This document shows positions 24,801 through 37,481 of a stretch of DNA of 64,000 nt, piece by piece. Each line of letters begins with the position of its first letter. The stretch's first letter is position 1. The notes below the pieces were generated by a model, which saw only the letters and a program-made list of their open reading frames with translations, was not told the origin of the DNA and did no database searches. The stretch comes from Dimorphilus gyrociliatus (lineage: Eukaryota > Animalia > Annelida): assembly GCA_904063045.1 (NCBI GenBank), contig CAJFCJ010000001.1:1054001-1118000 (forward strand). The letters are read 5' to 3'. A program made the position numbers and the translations under genes.

Positions 24801-25382
24801 ATGGGAATATTTAGCAAACTTGCCGAATGGCTAGGTGTCAAGAGAAAAGAATGCAACATAGTTGTAGTAGGCTTAGATAATAGTGGAAAGACCACTATTC
24901 TGAACAAATTGAAGCCGGATGATTCACAGACTTCTGATATTGTACCAACTATCGGTTTCAATGTGGAGAATTTTTCATCCAAATCACTACAATTCAATGC
25001 CTTTGATATGTCAGGCCAAGGCCGTTATCGTAACTTATGGGAACATTATTATAAAGATTGTCAGGGTGTGATATTTGTAATTGACAGCGCTGATAAATTA
25101 CGAATGCCCGTAGCAAAGGACGAATTGGACCAGCTGATTCAACATCCAGATTTAGTTTCAAAAAGAGTACCAGTTTTATTTTTTGCAAATAAAATGGATC
25201 ATAGGGACGCATTATCTAGTGTCAAATGCTCGACACTGCTGAAGTTGGATGAAATAAGCAACAAACCATGGCATATTTGCGCAAGTAATGCGATAACAGG
25301 AGAAGGTCTTGATGAGGGTGTAAACTGGCTTTCAGATCAAATAAAGTCATACCTAAGAGATCTCGAAAGAAGAAGAAGATAA
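24801..25382 (+). CDS. ARL6: ADP-ribosylation factor-like 6 (BBS3), intronless
   Basis: MGIF myristoylation start, [60 protein letters not shown]. Confidence 0.96.
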
Positions 25383-30145: not shown

Positions 30146-30694
30146 TTACTTTCTTAATCTGCTAATGATAACAAATGCTGCGGCAATAACTAAAATACCA
30201 ATTATTCCGAATAGAAACCCAAGTGCTACTCCAGTACTTCCACCTTTATTTTTTGGCTCTTCCTGCGTGGTATTTGTTGGAGCTGTTGTAACGTTTAATT
30301 TATGAGTGGGACCCACTGTAGTTATAGGTGGTTTCAAAGTAGATTTCTTAGTTGTTTGTGCCATTGTTGTTATATTCACACCTTTGGTAGTTTGTTTAGT
30401 TGATTCCTTGTTAGTCGTGTCCCCTGTGGGTTGTTTTGTTGTAGGCTTTTCAGTTGAAATGGCATGTTGGGTAGTTTTGGCCAATGTAGTACCTTTAGTG
30501 GTATGAACAGAACTATGGCTTCCTGTAATTTCAGCTTTAATCGTTGTATGTTTTATTGTAGTGATAGCAGGGGTTTTACTTGTCATATCACTAAAAACAA
30601 AGTGACCACAGAGAGCTGCGTAAAGAAAAATATTAATCCTAACTTCATCTAAAGTAAGTAATAAATAAGTACCGATAATAATGAATCCAAGCAT
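30146..30694 (-). CDS. Mucin-like Thr-rich type I membrane protein (porimin/CD164-like architecture)
   Basis: Removing a 57-nt in-frame intron gives the signal peptide MLGFIIIALCGHFVFS. This is followed by a T/K/P-rich stalk, a TM helix (GVALGFLFGIIGILVIAAAFVII) and a short SRLRK tail. Confidence 0.75.
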   Translation of the reverse strand: MLGFIIIGTYLLLTLDEVRINIFLYAALCGHFVFSDMTSKTPAITTIKHTTIKAEITGSHSSVHTTKGTTLAKTTQHAISTEKPTTKQPTGDTTNKESTKQTTKGVNITTMAQTTKKSTLKPPITTVGPTHKLNVTTAPTNTTQEEPKNKGGSTGVALGFLFGIIGILVIAAAFVIISRLRK

Positions 30695-30887: not shown

Positions 30888-31466
30888 TTAATTATTTCTT
30901 ATTCTTTCTTCTTTCAAATAATCAACCCATGTTTTGACAGTTTCGGTTTTGAACTTTCCTTCGACCGAATTAAAAAAGTCTTGTAGTCGGCCAGGTTTAT
31001 TTTCTGCCTCTTCGTATTCAAACGCTTGCATTATCATATCAAATTTATCTAGATCTTTTACAAATTGTGCTTCTTTAGTTAATTGCTTCTCATACTCATT
31101 CCAAAGATCAAGCAACTCATTTCCAACTGTATTGGAAACTAATTTGGCTATATTTTCCATGGCTTCCTTTTCTCGCCTATGCTTTTCTTCGACTGTGATA
31201 CCTTCAAAAGGAGTAATATCACCTACGATTGATTCTGCTAAATCATGAACCAGGGCGAGTTTGATGCACTGGTCTCGGGACACGTGGTCCCGCTTTTCGT
31301 CAATTATGAAACTAAGCATAGCCATACGGTACATATGACCTGAAACAGTCTCGGGGTCTTTAACCCCTGCATTGACCCATCCTGTTCTCTTTAACGACTT
31401 TAATCGGCCTACAACGCGTATAAATTCGAATAATTTTTTCATTTCCGCCATTGCGGAAGTGGCCAT
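30888..31466 (-). CDS. HDDC2: HD domain-containing protein 2 (5'-deoxynucleotidase), intronless
   Basis: LKSLKRTGWV, ETVSGHMYRMA, LALVHDLAESIVGDITP, EAQFVKDLDKFDMIMQAFEYE. Confidence 0.95.
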   Translation of the reverse strand: MATSAMAEMKKLFEFIRVVGRLKSLKRTGWVNAGVKDPETVSGHMYRMAMLSFIIDEKRDHVSRDQCIKLALVHDLAESIVGDITPFEGITVEEKHRREKEAMENIAKLVSNTVGNELLDLWNEYEKQLTKEAQFVKDLDKFDMIMQAFEYEEAENKPGRLQDFFNSVEGKFKTETVKTWVDYLKEERIRNN

Positions 31467-32123
31467 TTGTAGCTTTCGTAGTCAGAGAAATAGGATTTAT
31501 TTTAATAAAGAATTTATTCTTAAATTTTTATAAAATTTTATTAAACAAGTTTTTATATTTTGTTGAATATTACTTAATTTTTTTCTCCATTATTTTGCAG
31601 ATATATATTGTGTTCAACAGAGGGCGCTCTCATTGGATGCAATCAACTGGAAAAACAAGAAAAAAACTCCGTGGAAACTTTTTTGTAACTCTTGACATCT
31701 AATCTCAACCAGTAAGTTATTACGATATAGAATTAGGCAACTTCGTAGTTGTTGAACTTTTCGATTGGTGAATTTTTAAGAGGCATATTGTATATTTTAT
31801 CTAACTATCACTTGGGCAAGGCGCGTTTATATGTCTGCATGAAAATTGGTTAGTATAATTTTGGCAAAGGCCATGCATGCCTTTCCTTTGCGGCAGTCCT
31901 GTTAAAGCTATAATCTTTATTAAAGCATGTTTAGACTTCAAGGTGACTTGTCATTCTAAAGTTCATTGAGTTTTCTTAGTTTATTGCTGAATATTTGTTA
32001 TATACATAACAATATATATTATATATATATATAGATATATATATACATATATCTGACTCTATTGGATTAAAATGTTTTTATTAACGAAATTTTGCTTATA
32101 AATATCACTTATCAAACAGAAAA

Positions 32124-35100
32124 ATGACAGATATTGAAAGTGATGTTGGTAAGTTTCTGTCAATTATTCTATTTTTTAAGTATTTTGTTTCACGAATGTT
32201 GACAAGGATACGTTTTCAAGCCATTGATAAAATTAAAGATAACTAGAATTATTGACATACTATTAAACTTGTAGGCCTATTTTCGTATATATCGTATATT
32301 TCATGACTGCGTAACATTCGTTGAGTGGAGGAAGTCGTTTTTATAATCAATAAAAAAAAGTACTGTAGTCATGACCGATTAAACTTTAAACAAAACACCT
32401 GACGCCTTTTCTCCAGATCCAAATGAAACGGAATCCGTGGAGACCTATAGAACTCGTTTAAACGATGTTCTTAAAAAGAAGGATCTAGCCGGTAGTTATT
32501 TTCATATTAAGAACAATTTACGCATGGCTTTTTCTATCTTCCAGTCTTTGTGACAGACGAACAACTCTGTTTAATTATCTCTTTGCAGCTAAACTGCGAA
32601 GAACAAACAACAAAGGTTACTAATTGTACTCCATTCAAACAGATCTGGAAATGAGTGGATCTATAGTGACAAATAATGGAGACAACGTGCAAACTATGTC
32701 AACTGACTACGATTACTTAATCAAATTCCTCGCTCTAGGTAAGTGTATCATTTAAAAAAGTGCTTAGACAAATTATTTTTTGTATAAATGGTTAATATAA
32801 TCCAGTCTGCAAGCTTTAAGATTCAACAGAAACCTTTTTATGTTTAGTAAGTAAAGAAAGAATTGATAGGAGGTGTACTCTGATGATAGAGCGACAAGTA
32901 TATGTTTTCCACTCGGTTCTCTTTGCTGTCATAACCAATAGCGAGAGCTTAATTATCTATAGTTTCTAAATTTTGCGCTTGTTATTATATTTTTATACAG
33001 CGCCACCTCGATAAATCATCCACATCTAGATAAGCGACAATGTATAGGACTAATATAGATAAATTGATGTAATCTAATTAGCGAAACTCCCATATTTAAT
33101 TGTTTTTCATGAGCAGCAGGAGTTGGATGTATACTAGCTTGGATCATAATAAAGCTAATAGGAAAATATACTGTATATACTGTATATACTGTATATATAA
33201 TGAAAATGTTTATACTTATCGCTTCTGTTATGTTTATATAATACTGCGTTTATTGTTATTGTTACATTTTTAAGCATAAATTATAATTATAAAGTGTTAT
33301 AATTGATGTAAAATATGAAAATTGATAGGTGATTCCGGTGTCGGAAAATCCCATATGATACATAGTTTCGTCAATGAATCTTTCCACAACGAATCAACGC
33401 TAGGTGTTGATTTTAAAGTGAAGACTATTCGATTTAAAACCGGGGCAGGCTCTGAATATAATATACGTCTTCAAATATGGGATACGTGCGGTCAGGAAAG
33501 ATTCCATAGCATTTGCAAATGTAAGAAGAAATAGAATTTATACAGTGTTTTTTCTTTTTTTGAGACACTCCCTTTACCAAAAGAGAGCCTTTAGTTCTTG
33601 TTTTTAAGGCAAAAGAGTTTGGTAAAGATGGGGTTTCTCAGAAAACACTTGTATTCTAATTTTGCGATAGAATTCTGGGATTTCTTTAAATTTTTTGTTT
33701 CGTATAGCGTTTTATCGCGATGCAATGGCTTTCCTTGTCGTCTTTGATTTGACAAACAAAAAGACGCTCAAAAATGTCGAGTGGTGGCTGAAGGAGGTGA
33801 AACGTAACGCTTATTCTACAACACCTGATTTGGTTTTATGCGGTAATAAGAGTGACGATTTAAGAAGAGATGTTAAGGACAGTGAAATTGAACAGATCGT
33901 CAGCGCTTTCGGGTAGATTTTTGAGATGACCGTTACAACTTTTCCTTTTCTATTTCCAAGAGAGTCGGCTCCCAATCTCGTATTTGTCATAATCCTATGT
34001 AAATCTTTTTATAATGAAATATTACGAAATTCTATATATTTCTTTTATGTAAATAGTTTAAAGAAATTTATCCTTTTCTGCAAGAAAACCGTACCTCTAG
34101 AATCCCAAAGGCTTAATCTTATAGTATTTACTTCCAAGATTCAGGTCAACAAGCCTAACAGTGGAGTCCATTTAAGAAACTTTGCTACAATTATCGCGAT
34201 AGCCAAGATGACATTGCTCGTTCTCTCCCAAACTAATACCTTCCGAATTACTAATTACTGTAGTGCATCTCCAAATGCCCCAAGCTAATACTCAGGCAAA
34301 AGTTTTATATATTAGCTGACTTTCTTGGAGAAGAAGAGGAAACTGAGGGAAATATATATTATTCTATTACAATTATCGTAAAACTATTCCCTCCTTATTA
34401 ATTAGAGAAATTACATTCAAGAACTAAAGACAACATCTAAACATTTTTGCAGTTTAAATTACGTAGAAACATCTGCGTTAACGGGTGATAATGTTGATAA
34501 AGTCTTCCATTTCTTGCTCAATAATGTTTTAAAAGTGAGTGCGCCATAAATTTGCGGGAGGGAGAGAGAGAGAGAGAAAAAAAAAAACAAAAAAAAAAGA
34601 AACATCCATCAATTTTTGCAGAAAATCGAACTTCATTCAGAACAACCGGGACCTCCACGTAGATATTGCAGTCAAATAGCTTTAGTACCGAAGTCTGATA
34701 AAGCCAAATGCGCTTGTTGAATTATATACGCTTTTAATTGCTTTAAAATCACATATATTTAGTCATTATTTAGTCGTTTTTGCTGAATTTTTTTTATACC
34801 TGATAAACATTTTAAAACTATTTATAGATATTAATAATTATCCCAATATATTTTTAATAAATTACTTATGAGCCGAAAAATATATTTTTCATAATTCTAT
34901 CAGTTTCCTCTTTGTTTTCTTCAATACAGCTTGTTTTTTTTTTCTTCTTCTTCTTCTTCCTTTCAATTCTGATTGAAATATTTTTGTTTTTTGTTGGTCA
35001 TTCTTTTTATAACTTAAGAAGGAAAGTGTTAAAGCATATTGTGCATATTAAAAACATACTATTATTTATTATTATTGTATTTTTTTACTTGTTTTTATTC

Positions 35101-36179
35101 ATATTTGTAATAATAATAATATTTATATTTTCTATCATAATTGAAATGTCTTACAGGTGATTCGGGAGTTGGTAAAACAAGTTTGCTCTTTCAATATACC
35201 GATAGTAAATTTAATAGTAAATTTATAACAACTGTCGGAATTGACTTTAAAGAAAAAAGAGTTGTTCATCGGGCCAATTTACCGGATGGATCATTAGCAC
35301 CTACTTCTCATAAAATTCATTTACAATTGTGGGATACGGCTGGACAAGAAAGATTTAGAAGTTTAACTACAGGTTGTTTGTTCATTGTGAATTTGTCAGC
35401 TAGTTGGGAAAACTAGTAAACCTATTATTATCTATTTTTCAATTTATATATATTCAATAGATTGTATTGACCATGTAGATAATGGCAAACGGGAAATAAT
35501 TATCTGAAAAAAATAGATTATCAATAATTTAACCGGTAGTTTTTCCTCCCAACAGCTTTCTTTCGTGATGCAATGGGTTTTCTATTAGTGTTTGATTTAA
35601 CAAATGAATCGAGCTTTCGCAACGTTGGTGATTGGTTAACCCAACTGCAAACTCACGCATATTGTGATAATCCGGATGTAGTACTTTGCGGTAACAAATG
35701 CGATTTGGACGAGAATATTAGAGCTGTGTCTCAAAAGGAAATAAGAGAATTTACAGATCGTTATGGGTATAAACACTTTTTCTCTTCTTTTCACATTGGC
35801 TTATGCCATAAAAAAGGATAAAGCATATAGATTGTTAAAATAAATGTAAAAATAAAAAAAAACCACTTTCATTGCCAAATACGAAATAACGTTAAGTTTA
35901 CTTTCCTTTTTTTAACAGATTGTCCTACTTTGAAACATCCGCTAAAACTGGTGAAAACGTTTCACAGGCTGTTGAATGTTTACTTGACAAAATAATGCTT
36001 GTTAGTAAATTAAATATTGATAAATTTAGATAAGCTAATATATTATATATTTATTATTATTATTATTATTAAAGCGAATGGAAAAGGCTTTGGATAAAAA
36101 TAATTTTCCAGCTTTGGCTAGAGGTGGAGCTAAAATAACTGAAAAAGAAACAGCACAAAAAAAGGATTGCGCCTGCTAA
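32124..36179 (+). CDS. RAB27: Rab27, canonical isoform: 5' exons 32124-32148, 32417-32491, 32643-32738 joined to the distal cassette 35157-35372, 35556-35766, 35919-36000, 36075-36179
   Basis: [12 protein letters not shown]|[94 protein letters not shown]-terminal CAC. Confidence 0.92.
33167..33195. mobile_element. Triple tandem TATACTGTATA, a putative Tc1/mariner-type excision footprint array (representative of 11 sites)
   Basis: TA-CTG-TA inside a TA repeat. The same 11-mer occurs at 28629, 29322, 47962, 49990, 60154, 60260, 60328 and 62442. Confidence 0.5.
33329..34720 (+). CDS. Divergent Rab27-like proximal cassette (exons 33329-33520, 33708-33912, 34453-34534, 34622-34720) with no first exon of its own
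   Basis: [45 protein letters not shown] and a C-terminal CAC. The frame is open across four exons, with the same intron positions and phases as the distal cassette. Confidence 0.82.
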
Positions 36180-37481
36180 AGTTATGGAGAAAAATAAAAA
36201 TTCATCTAGAAAAAGAAACTATAAAAAAAAACAAAAAAAGGCTAAAATAAAAGTAAAAAGAAGGAAGTTTTAACAAATAATTAATCTTATATATCAGTTT
36301 TAAATTCAATTAACGACATTAAGGAAAGACATACAACATACGGTATATATTCTGTATATATACTGTATGTGTTTCAAATGAACTTTTCAAGCTTAACTAT
36401 CCTTCATCAACTAAGAAACAAAACTAAAACCTGCTTTAAAAAAACTATGTCTTCAATGTCTTTTTTTTAAACAAAGAATTCTTTATACGACATTCCTAAT
36501 CAATTTTATTTTTTATATCATCTTTCTTATTAGGTCATAATGTTTTTTTATGGAATCTCTAACCAATGTCTTGTTTTTCTTTCTTTCTTTCTTTTAAGGG
36601 TTAAATAGCGTTTATACATAATATAGGTTGTGTTTTATATTAATATATATATATATTCGTTGACTATGATAAAGTTTTTAGCAAGTTGCTTCTATATTTG
36701 TATGACTAGAGCGTACAACTGTCTTCCCCGTTCAAATTTTCCTCTCTTATAGCTATGACGATTGTTATATTTAGTTGTTTTTCTTTTTTTGGTTTGAAAT
36801 TTAATTGTGTTGATGAGAAGAAAGAACACATTTGTGCAATATAGGGAAACTTGTTGTAAACATTGCTTCTACATATATATACTAATATATTCTTTTCTTG
36901 CCATAAACTAACAGATTAAACAACTATGTTAAATCATCTGAAACCATTAATATTTTCTTGTTTATTCTGGGAAAATGATATTGAAATTAACAAATTGTAT
37001 AACAATGATAATGATAATAATATGCTTATATAAGAATAAACTAATTGTTAAGTATACAATATAAGTATACTATATTCGTATTATAAATATTGATATAGAA
37101 GATATACGAAAAAGATGGAAACGTCTTATTCTGTATGAAACGAACGCGACCTAAATGATAATACCGTTGAAAATATGGTATTAGTATACAATATTCTTTA
37201 GACCTATAAAGTTTCCCGCGTCCTATACTAATATATATGTCTCTATTCTAAATCTTATTACAAATAACATACATCTCCTAACGTCTTTTGTCCTGAATTA
37301 TTAAATTAATTCCTGACATAAAATGCATTAATGATTTGCGACTATTCCATTTTTCACCCTAATTATAATAAATAATCCAATAATTAACATGCTCTATTTT
37401 AGACGTAACGTATATATTATCATATTTTTAAAAAAATATTTGCAGTCTATAATTTAACGATTGTTTAAAATTGATGAGGCA

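What the first reader, a model, noticed from the sequence alone, without database searches (positions are those of the whole stretch)
32643..36179. One Rab27 first exon, two complete alternative GTPase bodies
The only exon encoding the Rab beta1 strand and the start of the P-loop ([13 protein letters not shown], ending 32738) is followed by two tandem four-exon cassettes. Each begins at G|DSGVGK, has identical intron positions and phases, and ends in its own CAC prenylation motif. The distal cassette (35157-36179) is canonical Rab27. The proximal one (33329-34720) is intact but divergent in the effector-binding switch regions ([26 protein letters not shown]). I found no separate first exon or in-frame ATG before either cassette; stops lie just upstream of both. 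Inference: acceptor choice (33329 vs 35157) and alternative polyadenylation yield two different Rabs from one promoter, i.e. neofunctionalisation by internal partial duplication.
Basis: partly seen in the sequence, partly recalled or inferred. Interest (0 to 1): 0.82.

Follow-up and report, generated by a model that had tools for sequence, protein, structure and literature searches.

The report
Rab27 gene with two alternative bodies
In the miniature annelid Dimorphilus gyrociliatus, one Rab27 gene has a single exon for the start of the GTPase followed by two complete alternative bodies, one canonical and one fast-evolving; RNA from a close relative shows the canonical one in use, but use of the divergent one is still only inferred.

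Summary
The window is Dimorphilus gyrociliatus (GCA_904063045.1).

- **Shared exon:** one coding exon (32643-32738, ATG at 32651) encodes beta1 and the first P-loop glycine.
- **Two cassettes:** two intact four-exon cassettes follow (33329-34720 and 35157-36179). Both have intron phases 1,1,2,0, and both end in CAC.
- **Distal cassette:** canonical Rab27, about 65% identical to Rab27 of other phyla. A transcript contig from a close relative joins a non-coding leader exon (31641-31710), the shared exon and the distal cassette exactly as modelled. That junction is therefore real.
- **Proximal cassette:** it lies in the 2.4-kb intron.
  - It is Rab27-derived and specific to this lineage. Both cassettes share an intron pattern not seen in Capitella, Helobdella or Priapulus.
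  - It keeps 30 of 32 Rab-wide invariant positions but only 12 of 35 Rab27-specific ones.
  - It has no first exon of its own.

The most likely reading is an unc-60-type gene, with a choice of 3' splice site plus intronic polyadenylation. No RNA showing the exon1-to-proximal junction could be obtained.

The deposited model, DgyrCDS264 (452 aa), wrongly fuses both cassettes.

I did not test it.

The parts
31641..31710 (+). Non-coding leader exon of the Rab27 transcript, donor gtaagt at 31711. It lies about 175 bp from the ATG of a divergently oriented HD-domain gene.
   Evidence: The first ~64 nt of the relative's transcript contig L004 align here at 89% and then jump to 32643.
32643..32738 (+). 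Shared first coding exon: acceptor cag|, ATG at 32651, 29 codons plus 1 nt. It encodes the N-terminus, beta1 ([11 protein letters not shown]) and the first base of the P-loop Gly codon.
   Evidence: It is the only beta1-like motif followed by a phase-1 donor on the + strand of 15-45 kb. It is 96.6% identical in nucleotides to the relative's transcript.
33329..33520 (+). Proximal cassette exon A (P-loop, switch I, interswitch, switch II). Weak, purine-rich acceptor.
   Evidence: The best solved-structure matches are Rab10/12/1, not Rab27.
33708..33912 (+). Proximal cassette exon B (FYRDAMAF...GNKSD).
   Evidence: Best solved-structure match is Rab27A at 62 bits, against 39 for the next family.
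34453..34534 (+). Proximal cassette exon C (ETSAL G5 motif, last helix).
34622..34720 (+). Proximal cassette exon D: hypervariable tail, CAC prenylation motif, TGA stop.
34856..34861 (+). AATAAA hexamer 136 nt after the proximal stop, followed by a T-rich stretch. Candidate intronic poly(A) signal.
   Evidence: Motif only; about 0.5 expected by chance in this interval.
35157..35372 (+). Distal cassette exon A (canonical Rab27 P-loop to switch II).
   Evidence: Rab27A, 111 bits. Joined to the shared exon in L004.
35556..35766 (+). Distal cassette exon B.
35919..36000 (+). Distal cassette exon C.
36075..36179 (+). Distal cassette exon D: CAC motif, TAA stop. The 3' UTR runs to at least about 36560.
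   Evidence: AATAAA at 36193 and 36246.

Best explanation
This is one Rab27 gene in which exons 2-5, including the stop codon and 3' end, were duplicated in tandem within the Dimorphilus lineage.

Transcription starts at a leader exon (about 31641) next to a divergent HD-domain gene. The first coding exon supplies the start codon, beta1 and the first base of the P-loop glycine codon.

Splicing of that exon to the distal acceptor (35157) makes the canonical Rab27. This is shown in a close relative. The step removes a 2.4-kb intron that contains the whole proximal cassette.

Splicing to the weaker proximal acceptor (33329), followed by cleavage and polyadenylation before 35157, would make a 221-aa Rab. 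That protein keeps the GTPase core and CXC prenylation but has changed most Rab27-specific surface positions, so it would have different partners. This step is inferred.

The logic is the same as in C. elegans unc-60A/B.
For: Anatomy:
- Identical phases, both cassettes intact.

No other first exon:
- None was found in the motif scan of 15-45 kb.
- No ATG-initiated phase-1 exon restoring Gly lies in either interval, and none at all lies between 34721 and 35156.

Distal junction proven in a relative:
- P0465, 233 aa, comes from the spliced 1092-nt Logan contig L004.
- It is 91% identical to the distal isoform over the cassette columns of the tree alignment, with exon boundaries exactly as modelled.

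Duplication is lineage-specific:
- Both cassettes lack the column-65 intron.
- Both have a column-101 phase-1 intron where Capitella, Helobdella and Priapulus have a column-94 phase-2 intron.
- Both share an extra column-199 intron.
- Capitella and Helobdella have only one cassette within +-10 kb.

Proximal cassette looks functional:
- 30 of 32 Rab-wide invariant positions are kept (P about 1e-10 if retention were uniform at 39%).
- Only 12 of 35 Rab27-specific positions are kept, against 30 of 35 in the distal cassette.
- The stop-free frame has a chance of about 1e-6.
- The AlphaFold model of shared exon plus proximal cassette has pLDDT 85, with beta1 at residues 22-29 at about 96.
- Its best structural matches are Rab27A/B.

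Context:
- No trans-splicing or operons in this species (PMC7854359).
- The shared exon is unusually constrained at third codon positions: 2 of 29 differ, against 83 of 205 in the distal exons, p=3e-4. This fits an added RNA-level role.
- Precedent: unc-60 (PMC3469465).
Against: - No RNA evidence exists for the 32738-33329 junction or for a 3' end after 34720.
- No protein like the proximal isoform exists in the 5.8-billion-protein collection apart from the fused genome model. The relative's canonical isoform was assembled.
- The run search listed no RNA holder for this stretch.
- Whether the relative has the proximal cassette is unknown. Its contigs stop 141-189 nt upstream of distal exon A.
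- The poly(A) hexamer is no more than chance would give.
- A cassette that lost function only recently would look the same.
Confidence: 0.6

Rival explanations
1. The proximal cassette is a silent or recently silenced relic of the duplication. It sits in intron 1 of a normal Rab27 gene, and only the distal isoform is made.
For: - No transcript-derived protein resembles it.
- No RNA holder was listed for the stretch.
- Its acceptor is weak and purine-rich.
- No orthologue was found elsewhere.
- It sits on a very long branch.
Against: - A copy that has diverged this far (about 40% identity) without constraint should carry stops, frameshifts and broken splice sites. It carries none (P about 1e-6).
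- 30 of 32 invariant GTPase positions are retained.
- The model folds confidently.
Confidence: 0.22
2. The proximal cassette is a separate nested gene. Its own promoter and its own beta1-encoding first exon were missed by my scans.
For: - Introns of 590 nt and 2.4 kb are very large for a genome with a 66-bp median intron, and could hold regulatory elements.
- The in-frame mini-exons at 32124-32615 used by the deposited model hint at alternative 5' structures.
Against: - No ATG-initiated phase-1 exon giving Gly, with or without a hydrophobic strand, exists between 32745 and 33328.
- No other beta1-like motif with a donor lies within 15-45 kb.
- The mini-exons lie upstream of the shared exon and still need it.
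Confidence: 0.08
3. The deposited model is right: one read-through mRNA encodes a 452-aa tandem double Rab, using a donor inside the last Cys codon of the proximal cassette (about 34714) to reach 35157.
For: The DgyrCDS264 model. The donor/acceptor pair is in frame.
Against: - The second domain would lack beta1.
- The model trims SLTTA and RMEK, residues that are present in the relative's real transcript.
- The relative's mRNA joins the shared exon directly to the distal cassette.
- The N-terminal extension is absent from that mRNA.
Confidence: 0.05

Closest known systems
C. elegans unc-60 (UNC-60A / UNC-60B ADF/cofilin), PMC3469465
   Same: One common first exon is followed by two homologous series of four downstream exons in tandem. 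Each series has its own stop and 3' end. The choice is made by 3' splice-site selection and polyadenylation, and the proximal series lies in what is an intron for the distal isoform.
   Different: - In unc-60, as I recall (not checked in the paper), the shared exon contributes only the initiator Met. Here it encodes 29 residues including a structural strand and part of the P-loop.
- unc-60 usage and its regulators (ASD-2, SUP-12) are shown experimentally. Here, proximal usage is not shown.
- The protein family differs.
Cholinergic locus (ChAT / VAChT)
   Same: [quoted passage not shown]
   Different: The shared exon is non-coding as far as I recall (not checked in the paper), and the two products are unrelated proteins rather than duplicates.
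Isoforms of small GTPases from duplicated exons (Rab6A/A', K-Ras4A/4B, Cdc42 brain/placental) - from my own knowledge, not checked here
   Same: Duplicated exons of a small GTPase gene give alternative isoforms.
   Different: Those swap one exon (a few residues or the C-terminal tail). Here about 87% of the protein, all G motifs after the first glycine, and the 3' end are exchanged.
Canonical Rab27A/B
   Same: - The distal isoform is 62-69% identical to Rab27 of annelids, molluscs and vertebrates.
- The proximal isoform keeps the RDAM..F..FDLTN signature, the CXC tail and a Rab27-like fold.
   Different: - The proximal isoform has lost about two thirds of the Rab27-specific conserved positions.
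- It has a shortened beta2-beta3 loop and DTCGQ in place of DTAGQ.

Membership tests
Rab27 subfamily (distal isoform) | Best sequence matches are Rab27A/B, and it falls inside the Rab27 clade. | tested here: met
   Exon A scores 111 bits to Rab27A, against 60 for the next family. It is 62-69% identical to Rab27 orthologues. It sits inside the starred Rab27 clade.
Rab27 subfamily (distal isoform) | C-terminal CXC geranylgeranylation motif and complete G1-G5 motifs. | tested here: met
   It ends in CAC. 32 of 32 Rab-wide invariant positions are present.
Rab27 subfamily (proximal isoform) | Groups with Rab27 to the exclusion of other Rabs. | tested here: met
   It is sister to all canonical Rab27 with support 100/97. 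The full-length best hits are all Rab27A. The top fold matches are Rab27A/B.
Rab27 subfamily (proximal isoform) | Retains the Rab27-specific conserved positions (switch, interswitch and specificity regions). | tested here: not met
   Only 12 of 35 are retained, against 30 of 35 in the distal isoform. For exon A the best solved-structure matches are Rab10/12/1, with no Rab27 in the top 60. It is Rab27-derived but not an orthodox Rab27.
Rab27 subfamily (either isoform) | Binds Slp/Slac2/Munc13-4 effectors. | not testable with these tools
   Needs pull-downs.
unc-60-type gene (common first exon, two alternative downstream exon series) | A single common first coding exon and no private first exon for either series. 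| tested here: met
   The relative's distal mRNA contains the shared exon.
unc-60-type gene | Two homologous exon series in tandem, each with its own stop codon. | tested here: met
unc-60-type gene | Both series are found spliced to the common exon in mRNA. | tested here: inconclusive
   Distal: yes, in a close relative. Proximal: no RNA data obtainable.
unc-60-type gene | The proximal series has its own polyadenylation site. | tested here: inconclusive
   AATAAA at 34856 with a T-rich stretch downstream, at the chance level for this composition.
Mutually exclusive exon cluster | Alternative exons are flanked on both sides by constitutive exons. | tested here: not met
   Each cassette runs to its own stop, and there is no common 3' exon.

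The most novel reading that the evidence does not exclude
A compact annelid genome makes two different Rab GTPases from one promoter and one shared exon that encodes a structural strand. One product is the canonical Rab27; the other is a fast-evolving derivative with re-specified partners. The strong synonymous constraint on the shared exon would then reflect the splice-choice machinery. Together with the nuclear-receptor array noted elsewhere in this genome, 'shared first exon plus alternative terminal cassettes' would be a recurrent route to new genes in D. gyrociliatus.
Probability: 0.45. Interest if true: 0.65.

Novelty: new member of a known kind. Interest (0 to 1): 0.5.

Why it matters
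- If the proximal isoform is made, a partial internal duplication can create a new trafficking GTPase without a new promoter or a new start codon. The shared part here would be a folded structural element, not just a Met or a UTR.
- It would give a natural experiment on which Rab27 surface positions set partner specificity: 23 of 35 specific positions changed while the catalytic core was kept.
- It corrects a fused gene model (DgyrCDS264) that would mislead orthology and expression analyses.

Tried and rejected
**Reads**
No reads were laid.
I worked beside them, and a local scan left out candidates touching them.
- The run search listed no run on record as RNA. Two small-share runs are probably the relative, and one is a D. 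gyrociliatus DNA run.

- The spliced distal isoform of the window has no single reference, so it was never sent to a remote tool. It was analysed only locally.
- Scaffold-plus-all-exon-piece alignments (A1, A2) misaligned and were dropped. A3 and A4 were used instead.

**Searches for a proximal-type protein**
- The representative search with proximal exon A found nothing above 64% identity.
- The word searches found no proximal-like protein from any source except the fused model.
- Exact look-ups of ten window ORFs or isoforms found none in the collection.

**The relative's upstream region**
- Three fetched contigs (L002, L003, L008) and a fourth listed without DNA, from four runs in all, end 141-189 nt upstream of distal exon A. 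I could not tell whether the relative has a proximal cassette.

**Other items**
- Owenia and Lineus Rab27 loci are not on record.
- N-terminal extension: the open frame through mini-exons 32124-32148, 32417-32491 and 32589-32615 is used in part by the deposited model. It is absent from the relative's transcript, so I treat it as unsupported.
- An ancient paralogue is disfavoured by the shared derived intron pattern. The AU test does not reject a proximal+distal clade (p=0.30).
- Trans-splicing to supply a start is excluded for this species by PMC7854359.
- Literature searches found no description of this Rab27 arrangement.
Full report
**1. What is there**

The window is contig CAJFCJ010000001.1 of assembly GCA_904063045.1. 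The gene is annotated as DgyrCDS264 of Dimorphilus gyrociliatus.

- A coding exon at 32643-32738 (ATG at 32651) ends ...[11 protein letters not shown] plus the first base of a Gly codon, followed by gtaagt.
- Two four-exon cassettes follow.
  - Proximal: 33329-33520, 33708-33912, 34453-34534, 34622-34720.
  - Distal: 35157-35372, 35556-35766, 35919-36000, 36075-36179.
- Both open at G|DSGVGK, both have start phases 1,1,2,0, and both end in CAC plus a stop codon.
- With the shared exon they give open frames of 221 and 233 aa.
- In-frame stops lie 4 and 6 codons upstream of the two acceptors.
- All large exons hit Pfam Ras.
- The cassettes are 39-42% identical in protein.

**2. Identity of the two bodies**

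The distal cassette is canonical Rab27.
- Exon A scores 111 bits to Rab27A, against 60 for the next family.
- The full isoform is 62-69% identical to Rab27 of Owenia, Solemya, nemerteans and vertebrates.

The proximal cassette is Rab27-derived but strongly diverged.
- Exon B still matches Rab27A best (62 bits against 39).
- Exon A, which carries the switch regions, matches Rab10/12/1 best.
- The whole isoform (P0151:37-257) finds only Rab27A orthologues, at 40-50% identity.
- A search of 1.8 billion representatives found nothing above 64% identity to exon A.
- In a maximum-likelihood tree it is a long branch sister to all canonical Rab27, with support 100/97. An AU test does not reject a clade of proximal plus distal (p=0.30).

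**3. Age of the duplication**

I mapped the exons of Capitella, Helobdella and Priapulus Rab27 exactly and placed all introns on one alignment.
- The beta1|P-loop intron (phase 1) is shared with the two annelids.
- Both D. gyrociliatus cassettes lack the column-65 phase-0 intron.
- Both have a column-101 phase-1 intron where the other three species have a column-94 phase-2 intron.
- Both share an extra column-199 phase-0 intron.

These three shared derived states mean the duplication happened in the Dimorphilus lineage, after those intron changes. The proximal copy then evolved fast. Capitella and Helobdella have a single cassette within +-10 kb.

**4. One first exon**

- A permissive beta1 motif scan of both strands over 15-45 kb finds one hit followed by a phase-1 donor, which is the shared exon.
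- I listed every ATG-initiated, stop-free, phase-1 exon. Between the shared exon and 33329, none restores Gly. Between 34721 and 35156 there are none at all.
- The species has no trans-splicing or operons (PMC7854359).

**5. RNA evidence**

Nothing from those places was sent to a search tool afterwards.

Indirect evidence came from the protein collection.
- The cluster of a genomic ORF of distal exon A (P0346) contains P0465, 233 aa.
- P0465 is encoded on a 1092-nt Logan contig of run SRR31837527 (L004).
- L004 comes from a close relative. It is 91% identical in protein over the cassette columns and 79-86% in nucleotides in the distal exons.
- It aligns to the window as 31641-31705/10, then 32643-32738, then 35157-35372, 35556-35766, 35919-36000 and 36075-36179, plus 3' UTR.

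This shows three things.
- The junction from the shared exon to the distal cassette is real.
- The exon boundaries are those modelled here.
- A non-coding leader exon lies about 175 bp from a divergent HD-domain gene.

No comparable evidence exists for the proximal cassette. No proximal-like protein is in the collection. The relative's genomic contigs all stop 141-189 nt upstream of distal exon A.

**6. Is the proximal cassette functional?**

- The chance of a stop-free frame of this length is about 1e-6.
- Of 32 positions conserved across Rabs it keeps 30. The two changes are A to C in DTAGQ and one S to T.
- Of 35 positions conserved only in Rab27 it keeps 12, while the distal cassette keeps 30. 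Keeping 30 of 32 under uniform 39% retention has P about 1e-10.
- AlphaFold2 on shared exon plus proximal cassette gives mean pLDDT 85. The exon-1 strand (residues 22-29) is integrated at about 96.
- The best structural matches are Rab27A/B complexes.

This pattern fits a working GTPase with a changed partner surface. It does not exclude a very recent loss of function.

**7. An extra hint**

Between D. gyrociliatus and the relative, third codon positions differ at 2 of 29 sites in the shared exon, against 83 of 205 in the distal exons (p=3e-4). Nucleotide-level constraint on the shared exon is what a splice-choice hub would show. Constraint on the translation-initiation region could also explain it.

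**8. The deposited model**

DgyrCDS264 (452 aa, two Ras domains) strings together:
- an N-terminal extension from mini-exons at 32124 and 32417;
- the shared exon;
- the whole proximal cassette;
- a donor inside the last Cys codon;
- the distal cassette, with SLTTA and RMEK trimmed.

The relative's mRNA contradicts the extension and both trims. The model is a fusion artefact.

**9. Mechanism and comparison**

The best-supported reading (about 0.6) is an unc-60-type gene.
- The common exon is spliced either to a weak proximal acceptor, with intronic polyadenylation (AATAAA at 34856), or to the distal acceptor.
- C. elegans unc-60A/B has exactly this layout and is experimentally established (PMC3469465).
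- ChAT/VAChT is a second analogue.
- The difference here is that the shared exon encodes a structural strand and part of the P-loop.
- Literature searches found no such case for a Rab.
- An earlier AI note (s1-080184) reports a shared first exon with alternative nuclear-receptor cassettes elsewhere in this genome. I did not test it.

**10. Verdict**

- It is a new member of a known kind of gene architecture.
- Interest is moderate until junction reads for 32738-33329 are seen.

Noticed in passing
window 32124-36179 (L001 5288-9343): The deposited gene model DgyrCDS264 (452 aa, two Ras domains) fuses both cassettes through a donor inside the last Cys codon of the proximal cassette. It also trims SLTTA and RMEK from the distal part. 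The relative's transcript contradicts it.
   Followed up: yes
window 32124-32148, 32417-32491, 32589-32615: Three mini-exons with good splice sites read in frame into the shared exon, giving a 45-residue N-terminal extension. Two of them are used by the deposited model. They lie in the 5'-UTR intron of the relative's transcript and are absent from it. They may be an alternative 5' structure or chance.
   Followed up: partly
window 32651-32738 vs L004 79-166: The shared exon is far more conserved at third codon positions than the distal exons between the two species: 2 of 29 differ against 83 of 205, Fisher p=3e-4.
   Followed up: partly
window 30888-31466 (-): A single-exon 192-aa HD-domain protein (Pfam HD, HD_3, YfbR-like) lies head-to-head with the Rab27 leader exon, about 175 bp apart. 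This is a compact bidirectional promoter region.
   Followed up: no
window 30146-30694 (-): A 182-aa Thr-rich ORF with hydrophobic stretches near both ends, mucin-like. The deposited annotation calls a 163-aa product here with no Pfam hit.
   Followed up: no
window 24801-25382 (L001 16085-16666): Another small GTPase gene (193 aa, apparently a single exon, Pfam Arf/Ras) lies about 7 kb upstream of the Rab27 gene.
   Followed up: no
L002, L008 and a third contig start 189 nt upstream of distal exon A; L003 141 nt (window about 35004): Contigs of the relative from four independent runs all break at nearly the same point, just downstream of a T-rich/CTT microsatellite stretch (window about 34930-34960). 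So the relative's intron 1 is missing from every assembly.
   Followed up: partly
P0152 (metaclust), P0156 (Schistosoma bovis), P0161 (Adineta steineri): Rab27 models from other taxa carry near-identical internal repeats of the exon B/C region. They are probably assembly or annotation artefacts, or very recent exon duplications. They are not diverged cassettes like the one here.
   Followed up: no
They were left out of all later searches and are not described further.
   Followed up: no
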